Below are positions 2,300 to 54,847 of a stretch of 64,000 nucleotides of DNA, piece after piece. Made by a program: the position numbers and the translations under genes. Positions within the stretch are counted from its first letter, which is position 1. Each line of letters starts with the position of its first letter. The stretch is from Phallusia mammillata (Eukaryota): positions 19,840,001-19,904,000 of the forward strand of contig OZ281497.1 of assembly GCA_965637545.1 (NCBI GenBank), read 5' to 3'. Below the pieces are notes generated by a model, which was not told the DNA's origin, made no database searches, and worked only from the letters and a program-made list of their open reading frames with translations.

Positions 2300-5200
2300 A
2301 TGCCTGGTTCTGGGTGGATTTTGCCGGTTAAGGCAAAGTATGGTGTAGGTGAGTATTCATATATATTTGCTAAAAAGACGTGTAAATGTATGACATGCTA
2401 TTCTACACATTGCACAGCCAAGATGTTTTTTGTGCTTGTTAAGTTTATTTCTGCACCCAACTTGTTTCTAGTGCATTGAAAAACTAGAAATCTTACAAAG
2501 TCAAACTTCCAAAGTTTACTTGATTTAAGTCTCTGTAGTTTAAAGAATTAAACCACACAAAAGAATTAAAAGTGTATTTCATTTTCATTATGAATCAAAG
2601 AATACAAGTTCTGCATTTTCAGACAGAGTTTATCTAACTTGATTTGGTTCAATTTTTTAGCTGTTTACAACTATAATTCAAAAAATGAACACCACCTGAA
2701 GCTGTCAGTTGGGGACACGGTTCATATAATAGAGGAATATGAAGGTGAATTATTGTTGATTTTGTGATTATTTAATATTTGCAACTGAAACATAATACTG
2801 CTCATTGAAAACCAATTATCAATCATACTAAACTGGTGCCTTGACTACAGTTTACCTGACTTTGTTTTGGTTTTAGGAAAATGGTATCGTGGCTACATCA
2901 TTCTAAACAAAGCTGTCAAGGTATGAGCTAACTTAAAATGATTAAATTTGCTAGTTATTGGTTTCCATTGATTTGTTTCTAATATTACTTGTATAAAACA
3001 TACATGACAAACATGTGGGATTTAAGTGTTTTTACGTAATCATTCATATACTTGTGTTTTTAAAGTGTATATATACTGGTTGCAACCATGATGGAAAGAT
3101 ATACATCTTTGCAATAAAATCGTTTGAATCAAACACACTTAAATTTTGTTCCAAATATTGAACAAAATTATCATTTGTTCCCAGGGTATTTTTCCTGCAA
3201 GTTATGTCCACTTAAAAGAGGCTATTGTTGAAAGGAGGGGGTGAGTTTCTCTCATTATTAACACTAATGCATTTTTGATAAACACGTAGTGCCATTGCAG
3301 TGCAATTTTTTTGAAGTATATATTATCTATTTACATTGTCATTATTTGCAACACAGAAAGACAGAGAGTATTGTCACCACAGAGCTTCCAATAGTGCAAG
3401 AGGTTTCCCATGTACTACGAGAATGGGGAGCTATATGGAAAGACATGTTTATGGTTAGTTGTTGGAGTTTTTCTATTGAACTGTATAATATCCTATTTTT
3501 AATTCTACATCAACAGCTGAATCGAGATGAACGGGTGTTCACTCATGTTTGCAAAATGATGCGAGAATTAATTTACATGAGACGACAAGTTGTGTCAGGA
3601 ACTTTGCCTGCTGATGAGCTGGGGCGAACATCCCATCAAATTGCAGACAGAATGGATTATGGCAATCGCTTACTGCAACTCGATCTAAGCATTCGCAGCG
3701 AAGAAACTTGTATCCCAGCTGATGTTCAGACATTGTCTGCTGTCGAAGTGTTTAAACTGGTAAGTTCTGTAATTGGTCACAGTTGGAAGGAGTTTTATGT
3801 GAAAATAGAATCCATTCACACATTGTAGTTCTGGGTTACATTGCTTACAAAACATACTATTGGTTTTGTTGTTACATATTTTGCACTGCTTCGCTTTAGA
3901 TTTAGATCAATATCTTCAATACCTTTCTGGACAAATTGCTGTTTTTATTTTTTAGCATGAAAAAGCGTCCATAAAGGTTGACCGACGTATTGCTGAAGAA
4001 AGGATACACAGTGGTAAAGAATCAACCACAGAAGTAATTCAGGACAACAGAAAATCACATGTGGACAGGTAAACTAGTTACCAATGTTTAAATTACAAAG
4101 CAACTGTACAATGTTTAATATTTACCTTTACTTGCAGCTTGTTTGTGATGGTAAAAAACTTTGTTTGTCGAATTGGTGAAGATGCCGATGTTTTTATGTC
4201 ACTGATGTGCGAGGACAGAGAAATCATTCCTATTAGGTAAAATTCCGAACATTGCATGTGTACATGTTCTTTACTTGCCAGTGAATGTGCAATTCTTTCA
4301 GTGAAAACTACTTTGTGCGATGGGGAAGTCAAGGTCTGCCCAAGAACATTGAAATGCTTAACAACCTCCGGGCTATTTTCACTGTAAGTTGTTGCCATGT
4401 AAACAAAGCGGTAGATGAGTTGTTAAGGATTTGCCAATCAGAGCCTATCATAGTTCCAACTTATTGCATAACCTTCCAACCATGTTTGCAACGTATATTA
4501 ATAGAAAAAAATGTTTTAGGATTTGGGGAGCAAGGATTTACAAAAGGAAAGGATATTTTTGGTTTGCAAAATTGTGAGAATAGGTGGGTTTTATTGTTAG
4601 AATATTAAGTCTAAAGTTTTCTGTCTATTTTTTCCTAACAATAATATTGCTCTGTTTTTTAAATATAATAATGTGTCCTTTTTTCCACTTGCTCTTGTAT
4701 ACCCACGCATTTGCTTAATTAACTGTACTAGGTCGAATGGATCTAAAGGTCACTGAAACCAAAAAGATGACCCTTGGACTAAGAAGAGCTTTTGGTGCTG
4801 CTGTCATGGATATCACAACAATTATGAAAGGATCCACAGAAAGTGATGAAGACAAACAGCATTTTATCCCTTTTCTTCAGTAAGCTTTTTAAATTGATTG
4901 TTTAACCATAATTTTAGGGTTGCTGACCTAATAGTTGCTTTCTTAAACAGAGTCTCTGGTGAAAATGAAAGTTTGCAGCAGGTCATCCAGAGAGCAATAA
5001 GTAGTCGTGGTGATATTAATCACAAAGGACAAGGTCTGTGATTAATTGCCGTCTTAGGTTGTATTTGTTTTTGTAATGTACAGTATACAGTGGCATGTTG
5101 TAATGTAGAATATAAATATCGGATTGCATCAATGTAACATAAAAGATAATCATATATGGGAGGAGTTTGCAAGTTGCATTTAAAATGCAGGTTTATGGGT

Positions 5201-40000: not shown

Positions 40001-42769
40001 GCAGCTGCACCGTTACCGAATATTTCACTAATTTCTCACACACAAAAAATCGGTCTGGTTTGTTTCCATATTCAACAATACTAAGCAAAGCATTTTAAAA
40101 CTTCATTTAAACTCATGCCTTTTTTCAAACAGGTGATGTACCATGCACACACTTGCACTTACCATGATCGCGTTGCGGGTTTAGTTAAGCAAAAATTCGA
40201 TGAATTACTCTCTTTGCTGCCTGACACCATCGTGGGTCGAAAAATTATCGCTGGTTTTGTCATGTTAACCATCGCAACGCAAGAATGGGGTGAAGAACGA
40301 AAGTGGACTGTTATAAGTGTTTCATCAGGTTTGTGGTAACGTATCAAATATGTCATCTAAGGCAGGGCTTCTCAAACTGTGGGTCGCGACCCCAACTGGG
40401 GTCGCGGAATATAATTTTGGGGTCGCGAAACATTTTGCGTTATTATGTCAGTCACAATAAATGGTATACGTGCGTACATTTATTGTTTACTATACCAGGG
40501 ATGCACAACCATGCGGCCTTCATACAGAGACAAGTCAAACTGCTCTTAAAAGAGTCTTACCAAACCAAGTCGCCATATGTACCACACTTTTTATGTCTAT
40601 TGTGTGCAAACAATGCGAAAAAGCAGATACCACAAACGTCACAATATAGATTGTGACGTCATAAAAGCTAAGACTGTCAAGTTAGAAATTAATTTAGGCT
40701 TTTTATGCGCCATTAGATAGTATATGTATAATGTATATCATATATATAGTATAAGTATTTCTTTACGTCAGTAATTTTAAAACACAAGCAAGCAGGCAAT
40801 AAGCGGACGCTGGTGAAATAAAGATCTGTGATGCGGCGTCATAGTGAAAAGGTTGTGCACTCCTGGGCTATACCCATCAAGGGGTCGCGTAGATATTTTT
40901 GTTTTAAAATGGGGTCGCAGAGCAAGAAAGTTTGAGTAGCCCTGATCTAAGGCATCAACTTTTCATACATTTTTTCGCAAAAAGGGGATCTTGAGCACGT
41001 TTTAACTGTTACCACCCTTAAAGTCCGTGTCAAACAGGTTGAGCAATTGCTGCATTTTGGTTAACAATGAAATTTCAAATTCTTACATTTGCATGGCTTC
41101 TAAACACGTATGGGTAAATAGGGCCCCTTCTGGATATATTCCCCGTGAAACTTTCACATGGCTCTGGTAGTAAAGAAGTTATCTAAGCTGGTAAAATTTT
41201 CTTAGTAGGCACATGGATGATTTGTGTGTAGGTAACCGTTGCGTGGCAGGCGACAAACTGAGCTTGCGAGGCGATACTGTGAATGATTGTCATGCTGAGG
41301 TTATCGCCAGAAGAGGCTTGGTTCGTTTTTTGTACAGGTTGGTTCACCTTATCTTGTACGTGTCATAGTATGTGCATGGTATTTTTTTCTCCTTTTCAGT
41401 CAACTGCTTTATTTCATGTCTGGTCCCAAGAACGACGATTGTATCTTTATGCCAGGAAATAATAACAGGTAATATTGGGAGTAAAACGTTTCCCTGACAC
41501 ATTCCGTTTGCCTGTTAAAGCTTTAAGAGTTACTTAAACGCAGGTTGTGTTTGAAACCTGGGATTTCCTTCCATCTTTACATAAGCACAGCGCCATGTGG
41601 GGACAGTGCCCTGTTTGCAAAGAGTGACATGGACAATAGCGAGGGCGAAAGCGGGGACGGCGTCCATAAGCCATTGTTTGACAATAAAAAACAAGGCGTC
41701 CTGAGGACCAAAGTCGAAAACGGTATGTACCGCAAACGGTATTCATATTCTTTTTCGTTCAGGCCACCTGTTTTTGCCATGTGCTTTTGTATGGCAAAAC
41801 ATCTGATCATTTACAGCTCGACTTTAAAACATACGCGAAGGCCTGCACAAAACCATCACATAACCATATGAGAAAATACATTTTAAACGTAAACAATGAC
41901 TTCTAATACTGCCATCGTACTTTATTCATAGGCGAAGGTTGCATTCCCATTGACGAGGATGCGAATGTCCCGACTTGGGATGGATTGCTGCGTGGAGAAC
42001 GTTTACGGACCATGTCCTGTAGTGACAAACTTGCAAAGTGGAATTTCCTTGGACTTCAGGTACAATTCGCCCACGCACTGTTGGCCGTAAAAAAACCACT
42101 AACACTGTTTATATAATACTATCAGGGTGCTCTGCTAAGCCAATTTATGGAGCCTATCTACATGGCATCATTGACATTGGGAATGTTGTACCATCACGGC
42201 CACTTGACAAGGGCGATATGCTGTCGCCTGGAAAAGTACTTAATGGAACTACCCGAGTTTGATGCAACATCCTCAATTTTCCATGTCCAACATCCATCGG
42301 TATATTTTAAACTTAATGCCAAGTTGTTTTTCTGTCTGAACGACATTAGTTATTTCGAACAGGTCAGCAAGATCACTGGAGAGGATCCAGGAAGAGATAC
42401 TGGCAAGGTTAAAACCAGGGAATACAGTCTTAATTGGACAATTGGTGACCCTAAAGCAGAAGTTTTGGATGGAACAAAGGGAAGGTGTGAGCCGCGATAC
42501 GGCTGCACCAACCCTATTTCTCAAGTTTGCAAATCAAACTTGTACAAATGCTATCAAAATGTACATGGTTGTAACAAAAACTTTTTTCAATTGTATGACT
42601 GTTGCTATGGTTTCAGGTGAAACAAGACCAAGATTTTAAATCTTATGCTCTTGCCAAAGAGGCATCTCTTGAGTACCAACATGCCAAATCTACCATGAAA
42701 AAAGCATTTGAACAAGCTGGTTGTGGAAAATGGATGAATAAACCAGTTGAAGAAGATGACTTTGTTTGA
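37086..42769 (+). CDS. ADAR: ADAR1-like dsRNA adenosine deaminase (2 further Z-alpha-fold domains, 2 dsRBDs, deaminase domain)
   Basis: Exons 37086-37144, 37728-37814, 37952-38058, 38117-38229, 38295-38760... encode a degenerate wHTH and an intact Z-alpha (KKHINH|[21 protein letters not shown]). Two dsRBDs (KNAVS..NE.AQ...GP.HKRR|F...EG.SKKESKL.AA). Deaminase motifs [39 protein letters not shown]. Ends [12 protein letters not shown] at 42769. Confidence 0.95.
40363..40944. mobile_element. hAT MITE in an ADAR intron, containing a nested second MITE (40496-40865)
   Basis: TIRs CAGGGCTTCTCAAACT / AGTTTGAGTAGCCCTG; perfect 8-bp TSD ATCTAAGG (40355-40362, 40945-40952). Inner TIRs CAGGGATGCACAACC / GGTTGTGCACTCCTG with 6/8 TSD TACTATAC/GGCTATAC. 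Confidence 0.9.
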
Positions 42770-51345: not shown

Positions 51346-52665
51346 TGATTGCCGACTTACTGCACTAAAGAAAGCTTGTTCGTGAGCTTGTAACCCACTG
51401 TCCTTTATTTTTTGCAAGCTTGTTTTCTGGGAAATGTCGCTCATATTTAACACGAAGTCTTTGGAGTTAAAGATTGACCGAGGTGGTACCTCCGAGGTGG
51501 TAGGTTCGGTGCTCAGTAAAGGCATTTGAGGTGGTGATCGGTGCACCACAAAAATCATTGCTTTATAGAAAACGCAAAGGCCAGAAATAATTTCACATAC
51601 GGTTCGCTATTTTGTTATACTTCCAAAGCATTGGTAGGTTAACAAAGATGGAACATGCACGTCACAATCAACAAAACATGACTATGACCTTTTTTGAGTT
51701 AAAGTTCGTCATTCGGGCACCGCGTACCTTATAAAAACCAATTGCATTAGAATCGTGAGTTTTTTATAATTTTTCCTGATATACCATAACACACAATCAG
51801 CTTTTTCTGCAACGAGATCATTTCATACTTCACATTTTTTTAATCAAAGTCCTGTAAAGAGAGGAAAAGGGAAGAGGTCTAATACACCCGTCAAGGTATT
51901 GCTGTATACCCTCGGAATTTGTGGATTTGGTCACGGCCATGCAAAGAAAGCTGACGAGCCTAAACGCAACGATGCGTATAGTGACTTTTGTTGGTTGTAA
52001 ACCGTCGAGTTAAACAATCATTAACGAAATGCTGAATAGCTAAACCTGAAATCAGCCATTTACCTTTATAGAAGCTAAACGCGTGGAACTGAATAGTTTT
52101 GCCAGTACCAATGAAAAATATTGAAAAATAGGTTTGAGAGTTGTCCATAATAATTGGTTCAGCCAATGGGTGCAAAATATGAATCAGGATAGATGTTTAT
52201 TAAATTTATTTGTACTGGAAGCCACTGATAGAACTGTTTAGGCAGATACTCGGCTTCATTAACTGGTCAGAATAGACTTAACAGATATAGGATTTTCATG
52301 CCGAATGACACATGGTTGACCAGTTAGTAGATTGTTTGTTTAAGCCAAGTGTACTGGCGGCTAGTAATGAAATAGGATCCTTTCAATTTCAAATGACTGT
52401 TTTTTTTACTAATTAAAAAAAATATAGCACTTAGACATGGTGTAGTTGAACGTTAAAAAAGGACGCCACAAGTTTTCCAAAATGCCTGGAGCGTCCCTTC
52501 CATCCTTTTTCATAATGGAGGGAATTTTTTCGATTTTGATGGAACAGGTACTGCTGCTGATATTTTTCGTGAAACTTTGGTCCTTGCAAGTGACATTTCG
52601 CTTGATAGCATCATCGTGCACAAACAAAGCTGATGCAACAAATGTCACAAACATGTTTAACATTA

Positions 52666-52717
52666 AGCTGCAGACAGTGCACACTGTTTCGACCTATAAG
52701 GTCTCATCAGTGCAGCT
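52666..52717 (-). ncRNA. Type I hammerhead ribozyme (minus strand), identical copy
   Basis: Exact reverse complement of 52877-52928; predicted cleavage after the C opposite position 52673. Confidence 0.93.
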
Positions 52718-52876
52718 GGTGACGAGAGATCGGCCGCATTGGCTACTTTTGGCTATTCAACGGCACTCCAGTTTGTTGGGAGCACAGGGTACAACCCAAT
52801 GCATCACCTAGTCTGTGCGATGCCACAACTGGACATACAGCACTACACTAGCCAATGCGGCCGATCTCTCGTCACC

Positions 52877-52928
52877 AGCTGCACTGATGAGACCTTATAG
52901 GTCGAAACAGTGTGCACTGTCTGCAGCT
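52877..52928 (+). ncRNA. Type I hammerhead ribozyme (plus strand)
   Basis: Stem I AGCTGCA (52877-83) / TGCAGCT (52922-28); core CTGATGA (52884-90); stem II GACCT-tat-AGGTC; GAAA (52904-07); stem III ACAGT-gtgc-ACTGT; GTC cleavage triplet with C17 at 52921. All conserved core nucleotides are present. Confidence 0.93.
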
Positions 52929-53128
52929 TATCATTTATTGGCTCTATGCTTTTACATGTTTAACATTTGTTGTAAACTTTTTTGTATACTTGTACACCCC
53001 AGGCTTAGGTATTTAAAAAGTTTTATTTCGCGCCTTAGTTTTCAAAAGGAAACCAAATATTGATTTTGGAAATTGTAAGATTCCTACAGTTTAATAAATT
53101 CCGAGAAGAGTCTAAACTAAAGGAAAGA

Positions 53129-54847
53129 ATGTCGAGTGTATTGGGACTATTTTGGAAGATCTTTGTTGAATTTGTGGCAGCATTTGTCCGGTAAAGTTAT
53201 GTTACTATTGTGATTTTCAGTATTTCTTATGTATACCCTATACCCTGTATACATAAGAAAATACTAAAAATCAACTACAGTAAGATAAAAAATACCTTGC
53301 ATAACACTGGTTTACACAGGTTATTTTGGAAGCCGTCGGCCAAGTCTATTCGTGGTGAAATCGCCTTGGTGACCGGAGCTGGTCAAGGCATGGGACGACT
53401 TCTCTGTTTTCGACTGGCCGAACTCGGTGCAAAGATTATAGTAGGAAAACGTTTGCGATTATGGTTCTGTATACCATATTGTCCGTCTGCTTTGGTTAAA
53501 CCAGTACTGTTGAACCTTCTTATAATCATTGCACCTAAGAATAGACGGATGAATTCTATTTAGCCCCCTTATACAAACTAAAACAACTATGCTATGCGGG
53601 AACTAAAACAAGCAAAACAAGTAAAACGTCACCCTCAGGTTAAGAACCACTAAGTTAAACATTATAGCTTATAACTAATTGATACATAGGCTGTAGACGT
53701 AAAAGAAAAGGCGAACGAGGAGACTGTGGAAATTATTAAGCAGAATGGAAGTGTTGCATTTGGATACACAGTTGATTTAAGCAATGCAAAGGAAATTCAC
53801 AGGTACCGATTTGGTAGCCAGGGATGTATATATATATATCCTTTACCATCCTTTCAATCAAAATCTGTGCCCATTTTATTACCTTGACTAGACTTGCTTC
53901 GAGAGTACGCGATGAAGTTGGTGACGTCACAATGCTCATAAACAACGCCGGTGTCGTATATCCAAACACTATACTATCGGTGACAGAGGAAATGATTTTC
54001 AACACATTTCATGTCAACGTTATTTCTCACTTTCTGGTGGGTAAATTTTTATCATAACCAGACATACTATTAGTCAAGTGTTGCAATTTGTTGCAGTTAA
54101 TCAAAGAATTTCTTCCGAGCATGAAAGAAAACAATCATGGACATATTTTTGCGATGGCATCATACGCTGGCCTGTTTGGATTACAACATATGATCGACTA
54201 CAGGTACACGTATCCAGAAATAATCATGTGTTCCCATTCAACACCCAAACTCATCAATTTGGTAAACTGTTTCCATAATATTGACATAAAAACCTCGATA
54301 TTGACAAAATGGGTTAGTTTCCTTTATCATTGCTTAATATTCTTTCCGCTATAAATTTGTTGCGAATTGTCCCAAGGTGAGGTTGAAAACTCGTTGTTGT
54401 TTTTTATATAGCGCTTCAAAGCACGCTGTAGTCGGACTTATGGAAGGACTTCGCCAAGAACTGAGAAAAGAAAACTTGGACGGAATCAATCTCACGTGTT
54501 TTTGTCCAACCTTTGTCAATACTGATATGGTTAAAAGGCCACAAACTCAACTGGGCAGCGTTTTGGTCCTTACACCAGAATACACCGTGAATGAATCCGT
54601 GGATGCAATTCTGCGCAACAAATTTTTAGTCAGTTTGCCTTCAGCCACTGTCCTCCAAATCATGAGGTAAGCAAAACTTGATATTGGTTGATCCGCTGTG
54701 TTGAATATAACCACATAAACTGGCCCTGCCACTGTTAAATGTCATTTCTTCTTTTTTTGCAGAGAAGTCATGCCAGGCGCGGTAATGGATGCACTGAGTG
54801 ATCATGCTTTGGCAGACGTAAAATTCTTTGCCGACGAAGATAAATGA
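53129..54847 (+). CDS. SDR16C-family short-chain dehydrogenase 1 (SDR16C5/RDH10/HSD17B11-like), 7 exons
   Basis: N-terminal hydrophobic anchor, TGAGQGMG, AVDV, NNAG, S, YSASK, CP; ends FFADEDK-TGA. Confidence 0.93.

What the first reader, a model, noticed from the sequence alone, without database searches (positions are those of the whole stretch)
52664..52930. Twin, outward-facing hammerhead ribozymes (one per strand) in a perfect 82-bp inverted repeat
Seen in sequence: each arm encodes a complete type I hammerhead (7-bp stem I, CUGAUGA, 5-bp stem II, GAAA, 5-bp stem III, GUC site). Either strand can therefore self-cleave, at 52921 (+) or 52673 (-). Established: animal genomic hammerheads occur mainly in Penelope-like pLTRs and retrozymes, usually as direct repeats that release circular monomers; both-polarity hammerheads characterise viroid-like RNAs. 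Inference: this inverted, ORF-less ambisense arrangement is not the canonical retrozyme layout. It may be a distinct ribozyme-bearing fold-back element or a Penelope pLTR inversion. The palindromic GUGCAC in stem III could also allow dimeric cleavage.
Basis: partly seen in the sequence, partly recalled or inferred. Interest (0 to 1): 0.92.

Follow-up and report, generated by a model that had tools for sequence, protein, structure and literature searches.

The report
Head-to-head hammerhead retroelement insertion
The twin hammerhead ribozymes are real, but they are two truncated copies of a very abundant ribozyme-carrying retroelement joined head to head in one insertion, which is the known insertion pattern of Penelope-like retrotransposons and not a new kind of element.

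Summary
There is a perfect 82-nt inverted repeat at 52664-52745 / 52849-52930. Each arm carries a complete type I hammerhead: CUGAUGA, GAAA, a GUC site and 18 standard pairs, and the MFE of the 52-mer is the hammerhead fold. Rfam scores it 22.8 bits, below the gathering score of 34.

The unit is one insertion flanked by a 14-bp target-site duplication (52651-64 / 52954-67). It consists of two parts:
- a minus-oriented, 5'-truncated copy (52664-52843) with no tail;
- a plus-oriented, 5'-truncated copy (52843-52956) with a 26-nt tail.

Contigs from public runs of the same organism show that the element belongs to a very high-copy dispersed family. Other copies have variable 5' ends and two recurrent 3' ends, which match the two outer ends here. 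They depart from this copy exactly at 52843.

An inverted 5'-truncated copy, a tail at one end and a short duplication make up the published signature of Penelope-like element insertion. Opposite-strand hammerhead pairs 100-700 bp apart were already reported in 2014.

A read-through transcript would fold into an 82-bp duplex (-198 kcal/mol), not into a ribozyme.

The scan has already met and followed up the same kind of element elsewhere in this genome. The finding is ordinary and of low interest.

The parts
52651..52664 (.). Left copy of the target-site duplication, ACATGTTTAACATT. Its last T is also the first base of the inverted repeat.
   Evidence: Exact 14-nt direct repeat abutting both ends of the unit. 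Chance of 14 exact matches at a fixed pair of places is about 8e-9.
52664..52843 (-). Minus-oriented, 5'-truncated copy of the family (about 180 nt). Its 3' end lies at the left edge and stops at the family's tail-less terminus.
   Evidence: The left arm is the reverse complement of 52849-52930. The reverse complement of 52753-52785 matches the sequence that other copies carry upstream of 52843. A contig covering 52726-52843 runs on differently beyond 52843 (tables 7 and 8).
52666..52717 (-). Hammerhead ribozyme, type I, minus strand. Predicted cleavage after the C at 52673.
   Evidence: Identical to the + strand 52-mer. Rfam Hammerhead_1 scores 22.8 bits at 52667-52716.
52843..52956 (+). Plus-oriented, 5'-truncated copy of the family (about 114 nt), including the 3' tail.
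   Evidence: Many contigs from other copies align from 52843 rightwards and carry a different, shared sequence before 52843. Family 3' ends fall at 52956/57 (tables 7 and 8).
52877..52928 (+). Hammerhead ribozyme, type I, plus strand. Predicted cleavage after C52921.
   Evidence: Core and all pairs checked. Rfam alignment is full length with no non-standard pair.
52931..52956 (+). 26-nt 3' extension ('tail'), present at the right end only.
   Evidence: Absent from the left arm. Other family copies end either at 52930/31 or at 52956/57 (table 7).
52954..52967 (.). Right copy of the target-site duplication. Its first 2-3 bases overlap the family's 3' terminus, so the true duplication is 11-14 bp.

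Best explanation
This is one retrotransposition event of a short, very abundant, hammerhead-carrying retroelement, inserted in the manner of Penelope-like elements (PLEs).

Inferred mechanism: a PLE reverse transcriptase/GIY-YIG endonuclease, acting in trans, cut both strands of an AT-rich target (...AACATT) 11-14 bp apart. Each 3'-OH primed reverse transcription inside the 3' region of the element RNA, one at the tail-less start site and one at the tailed start site. Both cDNAs stopped early, after about 180 and 114 nt. They were joined head to head at 52843, and gap filling produced the duplication.

The two ribozymes are therefore passengers of a duplicated 3' end and face outward because both outer ends are element 3' ends. 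At this locus, 175 nt upstream of the ATG of a short-chain dehydrogenase gene, the insertion most likely has no ribozyme function. A transcript crossing both arms would form an 82-bp duplex. Only a transcript starting inside the spacer could fold the hammerhead.

Shown: the anatomy, the family membership, the recurrent termini and the ribozyme architecture. Inferred: the enzyme, the double priming and the lack of function.
For: - Perfect 82-nt inverted repeat and a 14-nt flanking direct repeat.
- The tail is present at one end only.
- Summed contig depth jumps from about 220-310 in the flanks to as much as 1.8 million across 52664-52956 in run X1. 7532 contigs were laid, with similar pictures in X2 and X4 from two other studies.
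- Copies at other loci end at 52954-56 but start at 52846-52867, inside contigs that continue on both sides. That means a fixed 3' end and variable 5' ends (table 8).
- Two recurrent 3' termini, 52930/31 and 52956/57, coincide with the two outer ends of this insertion (table 7).
- Other copies diverge from this one at 52843 on both sides.
- Literature: an inverted 5'-truncated copy adjacent to the element and a 30-40-bp tail at one end are typical of PLEs (PMC8557442). Inverted pLTRs, a 31-bp tail, 8-10-bp duplications and head-to-head as the commonest inverted arrangement are described in PMC3846280. A purified PLE protein cuts and extends both DNA strands, prefers AT-rich 5'-ATT-3' sites and starts reverse transcription internally, which explains the tail (PMC11167929). 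Hammerhead pairs on opposite strands 100-700 bp apart were reported in Schistosoma mansoni (PMC4209133).
Against: - No reverse transcriptase or GIY-YIG ORF lies in the element, and none was found among the four >=150-aa window ORFs scanned. The link to a PLE enzyme therefore rests on insertion anatomy alone.
- The family consensus and any parent PLE could not be retrieved.
- The tail is 26 nt, against the published 30-40 nt.
- The two copies are not identical over their whole overlap. At 52746-52752 the minus copy reads CTTTTGG where the plus copy's equivalent is GTGTAG. Three or four differences sit next to 82 perfect bases, which a single-template event does not predict.
- The hammerhead has a stable 5-6-bp helix III, whereas published animal PLE hammerheads are mostly minimal forms with little or no helix III (PMC4209133).
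- No contig spans the whole palindrome.
Confidence: 0.83

Rival explanations
1. The fold-back is itself the mobile unit: a distinct non-autonomous family whose RNA carries a ribozyme arm and a built-in anti-ribozyme arm and is copied as a whole.
For: Several unverified first-stage notes on this genome describe dispersed 250-300-bp elements with hammerheads of opposite polarity at both ends. The duplication flanks the whole composite.
Against: Other copies leave this copy's sequence exactly at 52843 on both sides. More than 230 different joints were seen among family contigs, including opposite-strand joints at other positions. Many copies are solo 90-110-nt 3' fragments (table 8). An RNA with an 82-bp perfect hairpin (-198 kcal/mol) is a poor template.
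Confidence: 0.07
2. It is a functional ambisense ribozyme locus, viroid-like or regulatory. Transcripts of either strand would self-cleave, or the hairpin would feed small-RNA silencing of the family or tune the neighbouring dehydrogenase gene.
For: Both ribozymes are intact. The element lies 175 nt upstream of the gene's ATG. A possibly-RNA run (X6) holds family sequence.
Against: X6 shows no depth on the flanks, so there is no sign that this locus is transcribed. The two hammerheads are one sequence in two DNA orientations, unlike the distinct plus and minus ribozymes of viroid-like RNAs. Nothing beyond the insertion mechanism is needed to explain the structure. The perfect arms and duplication indicate a young, probably neutral insertion.
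Confidence: 0.05
3. It is a DNA transposon of the MITE or foldback type with 82-bp terminal inverted repeats.
For: Long perfect terminal inverted repeats and a flanking direct repeat.
Against: The ends are asymmetric, with a 26-nt tail on one side only. The duplication is long at 11-14 bp. Family copies have a fixed 3' end and variable 5' ends. The repeated part is a ribozyme-bearing retroelement 3' end.
Confidence: 0.02
4. It is an assembly artefact: a palindrome created by a chimeric read or a collapsed repeat.
For: No contig in four runs spans the whole unit. PLE tandem/inverted insertions are known to cause problems in shotgun assemblies (PMC8557442).
Against: Contigs from three independent studies join the left flank to the reverse-complemented ribozyme end: X1 52434-52687 with 0 differences, X2 52554-52687, X4 52313-52672. 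Contigs from the same studies join the tail to the right flank: X1 52931-53300, X2 52930-53273, X4 52929-53300. Both outward-facing ends are therefore real.
Confidence: 0.03

Closest known systems
Penelope-like element insertions with an adjacent inverted 5'-truncated copy and a one-sided 'tail' (Arkhipova et al. 2013, PMC3846280; Craig et al. 2021, PMC8557442; PAc in vitro system, PMC11167929)
   Same: Head-to-head inverted copies, 5' truncation, a short extension at only one end, a short variable duplication, an AT-rich target ending in ATT, and a hammerhead in the repeated terminal region.
   Different: No RT/EN ORF and no direct pLTR pair are present; only two short 3' fragments remain. 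The tail is 26 nt, not 30-40. The parent element was not identified.
Hammerheads of metazoan PLEs, including dual motifs on opposite strands 100-700 bp apart in Schistosoma mansoni (Cervera and de la Pena 2014, PMC4209133)
   Same: Type I topology, a G10.1-C11.1 pair, near-palindromic helix III that allows a dimeric ribozyme, massive copy number, mostly truncated copies, and opposite-strand pairs.
   Different: This ribozyme has a 7-bp helix I and a stable 5-6-bp helix III, so it should be able to fold as a monomer. Most animal PLE motifs are minimal forms with almost no helix III.
Metazoan non-LTR retrozymes (Cervera and de la Pena 2020, PMC7229834; Li, Clavereau and Pollet 2026 preprint, 10.64898/2026.07.22.740005)
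   Same: Short non-coding elements with a classical type I hammerhead, a duplication longer than 4 bp, low GC, and a likely dependence on PLE enzymes.
   Different: Retrozymes are head-to-tail tandem repeats that release circular RNAs between two ribozymes of the same polarity. Here there is one ribozyme per strand, so double cleavage cannot excise a unit.
Viroid-like circular RNAs with hammerheads in both polarities (Avsunviroidae, satellite RNAs)
   Same: One hammerhead can be read from each strand.
   Different: In those RNAs the plus and minus ribozymes are different sequences at different places in a replicating circular RNA. Here they are one sequence duplicated in inverted orientation in chromosomal DNA.

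Membership tests
Hammerhead ribozyme, type I (Rfam RF00163) | Conserved core: C3-U-G-A-N-G-A9, G12-A-A14, A15.1-U16.1, H17 not G | tested here: met
   CUGAUGA at 52884-90, GAAA at 52904-07, A52907-U52920, C52921.
Hammerhead ribozyme, type I (Rfam RF00163) | Three helices around the core, with helix I open and helices II and III closed by loops | tested here: met
   7, 5 and 5-6 bp, all standard pairs. The MFE of the 52-mer equals this fold. The descriptor gave no hit in 300 resampled windows.
Hammerhead ribozyme, type I (Rfam RF00163) | Score at or above the family's gathering threshold | tested here: not met
   22.8 bits against 34. The alignment is full length, and the shortfall comes mainly from the 8-nt longer helix III and from stems that differ from the seed.
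Hammerhead ribozyme, type I (Rfam RF00163) | Site-specific self-cleavage | not testable with these tools
   Needs in vitro transcription. The laid runs were contigs only and cannot show RNA ends.
Penelope-like element (autonomous) | ORF with a telomerase-like RT and a GIY-YIG endonuclease | tested here: not met
   The 289-bp unit has no ORF beyond chance. The window has only six ORFs of 150 aa or more, and the four scanned carry no RT/EN domain. I therefore file it as a PLE-type insertion of a truncated or non-autonomous copy, not as a PLE.
PLE-type insertion signature | Inverted 5'-truncated copy adjoining the element, head to head | tested here: met
   Joint at 52843, with both 3' ends outward.
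PLE-type insertion signature | Optional short 3' extension ('tail') present at one end only, reflecting two RT start sites | tested here: met
   26-nt tail at 52931-56 on the right only. The family has termini at 52930/31 and at 52956/57.
PLE-type insertion signature | Short target-site duplication at an AT-rich site | tested here: met
   ACATGTTTAACATT on both sides.
PLE-type insertion signature | Sequence identity of the repeated end to the pLTR or 3' region of an autonomous PLE in the same genome | not testable with these tools
   Only the 64-kb window is readable. The family-specific 23-mer was absent from viral contigs, and the metagenome scan returned unrelated hammerheads.
Metazoan non-LTR retrozyme | Head-to-tail tandem repeats, each with a hammerhead of the same polarity | tested here: not met
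   There are only two copies, in inverted orientation, and no further copy in the window.
Viroid-like ambisense ribozyme RNA | Distinct plus and minus ribozymes on a circular replicating RNA | tested here: not met
   The two ribozymes are the same 52 nt, lying in chromosomal DNA between target-site duplications. Circularity itself is not testable here.
MITE / foldback DNA transposon | Terminal inverted repeats that reach both ends symmetrically | tested here: not met
   A 26-nt unpaired tail lies between the right arm and the duplication. The left arm abuts the duplication directly.

The most novel reading that the evidence does not exclude
The family may be a SINE-like parasite of PLE enzymes carrying a monomer-competent hammerhead, unusual for animal PLE-associated motifs, whose mobility does not need ribozyme activity. 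A sizeable subfamily (7-17% of summed depth) carries A in place of the catalytic G12 (G52904), while the three other CpG sites in the arm show no variant above 10%. Its head-to-head insertions would also create long perfect hairpins near promoters, which could seed small-RNA silencing of the family.
Probability: 0.12. Interest if true: 0.45.

Novelty: new member of a known kind. Interest (0 to 1): 0.15.

Why it matters
It matters little beyond annotation. The locus is a clean, young example of PLE-type double-ended insertion: perfect arms, an intact duplication, one tailed and one tail-less end, and a single-base joint. It fits the in vitro finding that a PLE protein primes on both target strands. 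Such fold-backs should be masked as retroelement insertions and not scored as ribozyme genes or viroid-like elements. They recur throughout this genome, where the scan has already flagged and followed up the same structure on other DNA.

Tried and rejected
- Rfam at gathering level found nothing in the window; only E-value mode shows the hammerhead.
- I looked for more copies of the family. There are none elsewhere in the window (blastn; 25-mer with up to 3 mismatches).
- Exact scans of viral and metagenome contigs with the 25-nt core plus stem II returned 24 loci. These share only those 25-27 nt and are unrelated type I hammerheads in marine viral-type contigs.
- A family-specific 23-mer gave no hit in viral contigs.
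- A MAFFT/RNAalifold alignment of those hammerheads with this one recovered only the invariant stem II, because helix III lengths differ, so it gave no usable covariation.
- The findings look-up by sequence was blank.
- Ciona, Oikopleura and nematode spliced-leader strings are absent from the window.
- I considered and rejected the MITE, assembly-artefact, retrozyme and viroid-like readings (see rival explanations and membership tests).

Full report
**1. The observation**

The repeat finder gives arms at 52664-52745 and 52849-52930: 82 nt, 100% complementary, 103 nt apart.

On the + strand the right arm holds the following (read; every pair checked by script):
- stem I: 52877-83 / 52922-28, 7 bp
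- CUGAUGA: 52884-90
- stem II: 52891-95 / 52899-903, loop UAU
- GAAA: 52904-07
- stem III: A52907-U52920 plus 4-5 more pairs
- the GUC site, ending at C52921

The 52-nt RNA folds by itself into exactly this structure at -17.3 kcal/mol. The minus-strand copy (52666-52717) is the same sequence.

A descriptor that demands core, helices and topology finds only these two sites in the window. It finds none in 300 first-order resamples of the 64 kb. The bare core pattern is expected 0.01 times per window.

Rfam reports nothing at gathering level. In E-value mode Hammerhead_1 aligns over its full length with no non-standard pair, at 22.8 bits against a threshold of 34. The longer helix III accounts for much of the shortfall.

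**2. What the unit is**

An exact 14-nt direct repeat, ACATGTTTAACATT, abuts both ends of a 289-bp unit, at 52651-64 and 52954-67. The chance of this at a fixed pair of places is about 8e-9. The left arm touches the repeat directly. The right arm is separated from it by a 23-26-nt tail (52931-52956) that has no inverted partner. This is therefore an insertion with asymmetric ends.

Laying Logan contigs from four runs of the same organism on 52300-53300 gave these results:
- **Copy number.** Summed depth is about 220-310 in both flanks in run X1. It reaches 1.8 million between 52664 and 52956, with 7532 contigs laid. X2 and X4, from two other studies, look alike. The unit belongs to a very high-copy dispersed family.
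- **A fixed 3' end with variable 5' ends.** Copies embedded in contigs that continue on both sides end at 52954-56 but begin at 52846, 52859, 52860, 52864 or 52867.
- **Two recurrent 3' ends.** Family sequence stops at 52930/31 or at 52956/57. These are exactly the two outer ends of this insertion, since 52664 mirrors 52930.
- **A joint at 52843.** Contigs that match from 52843 rightwards carry a shared, different sequence before it (...CCAAACAAACTGGAGTGCCGTTGGATGG). That sequence is the reverse complement of window 52753-52785, apart from a few mismatches. A contig matching 52726-52843 continues differently beyond 52843.

So 52664-52843 is a minus-oriented copy of about 180 nt, and 52843-52956 is a plus-oriented copy of about 114 nt. 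Both are 5'-truncated and they are joined head to head at 52843.

The outward-facing ends are not an assembly artefact. Contigs from three studies join the left flank to the inverted ribozyme end, and the tail to the right flank (table 8). No contig spans the whole palindrome.

**3. Mechanism**

This anatomy is the published signature of Penelope-like element (PLE) insertion:
- Inverted pLTRs, a 31-bp tail at the 3' end of one of them, 8-10-bp duplications, and head-to-head as the most frequent inverted form (PMC3846280).
- A purified PLE protein cuts and extends both target strands, prefers AT-rich 5'-ATT-3' sites, and starts reverse transcription at internal sites whose spacing corresponds to the tail (PMC11167929).

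The duplication here ends in ATT. I therefore infer one event with priming on both target strands, one tail-less and one tailed start, two aborted cDNAs, and a joint at 52843.

The enzyme is inferred, not shown. The element has no ORF, and the four of the window's six ORFs of 150 aa or more that I scanned carry no RT/EN domain. I could not read the rest of the genome.

**4. What it does here**

The whole unit folds as an 82-bp perfect hairpin at -198 kcal/mol, z = -23. Read-through transcripts of either strand would lock the ribozyme in duplex. Even the single 114-nt and 179-nt copies prefer an alternative pairing to the hammerhead fold.

Two ribozyme RNAs can form a dimer through a 14-bp intermolecular helix III, at -50.0 against -34.6 kcal/mol for two monomers. 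This matches published animal type I hammerheads (PMC4209133).

With one ribozyme per strand, no unit can be excised, so this is not a retrozyme-type circle source.

The locus lies 175 nt upstream of the ATG (53131) of a short-chain dehydrogenase gene. Three later pieces of that gene match adh_short. The locus also lies 10 nt upstream of the ATG of an unverified minus-strand ORF.

Run X6, which may be RNA, holds family sequence but nothing from the flanks. I have no evidence that this locus is transcribed. The most likely status is a young, neutral insertion.

**5. Comparison and novelty**

Opposite-strand hammerhead pairs 100-700 bp apart, attributed to truncated PLEs, were reported in Schistosoma mansoni in 2014 (PMC4209133).

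The ribozyme is closer to the classical type I form of non-LTR retrozymes than to minimal PLE motifs. Those retrozymes are now argued to be non-autonomous PLE derivatives (preprint 10.64898/2026.07.22.740005).

The one mildly unusual trait is the stable 5-6-bp helix III.

The scan's own notes list many such elements in this genome. An earlier follow-up on other DNA reached the same reading. I treated those notes as leads; the anatomy above rests.

**6. Loose ends**

- The two copies differ at 52746-52752 (CTTTTGG) against the equivalent of 52843-48 (GTGTAG on the same strand), right next to 82 perfect bases. The nearest relative seen in the runs reads GTGTGG there.
- A52798 is private to this copy; other copies have C.
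- G52904, the catalytic G12 and part of a CpG, is A in 7-17% of family depth. The other three CpGs of the arm show no variant above 10%. This points to a ribozyme-dead subfamily and not to random decay. It would agree with the in vitro finding that hammerhead mutants still insert (PMC11167929).

Noticed in passing
L001-L024 (e.g. L001:2400-2455, L003:2749-2816, L004:1536-1603, L005:845-912, L013:2046-2113): The 25-nt module CTGATGAGACCTTATAGGTCGAAAC (core plus stem II and loop) occurs exactly in 24 marine viral-type and metagenome loci (duplicates of the same contig included). There it sits in complete type I hammerheads whose stems I and III differ but stay paired. Several contigs carry two or three copies 200-750 bp apart. 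These are unrelated to the window's family outside the module.
   Followed up: partly
window 53198-53288: An AT-rich hairpin of about 90 nt (perfect 14-nt arms at 53223-36 / 53247-60) lies in the first intron of the dehydrogenase gene. It gives weak, sub-threshold matches to many miRNA precursor families on both strands (best 34.4 bits against 80).
   Followed up: no
window 52904: Across family copies in four runs, the catalytic G12 of the hammerhead is A in 7-17% of summed depth. It is the only arm position varying above 10%, which suggests a ribozyme-dead subfamily that still amplified.
   Followed up: partly
window 52746-52752 and 52798: Private changes of this copy: a cluster of 3-4 differences at the inner end of the left arm, and A for the family's C at 52798, next to 82 bases of perfect arm identity.
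   Followed up: partly
window 52409-52654 (-): A minus-strand ORF starts with a hydrophobic, signal-peptide-like N-terminus (MFVTFVASALFV...). Its ATG lies inside the left duplication copy, 10 nt from the insertion. It has no Pfam match, and it is unverified whether it is a gene.
   Followed up: partly
window 42147-42617 (+) and 3289-3825 (+): Exon-sized ORFs with an adenosine-deaminase (editase) domain (A_deamin, E 6e-16) and a DOCK N-terminal domain (E 2e-24). These are ordinary animal genes in the window.
   Followed up: no
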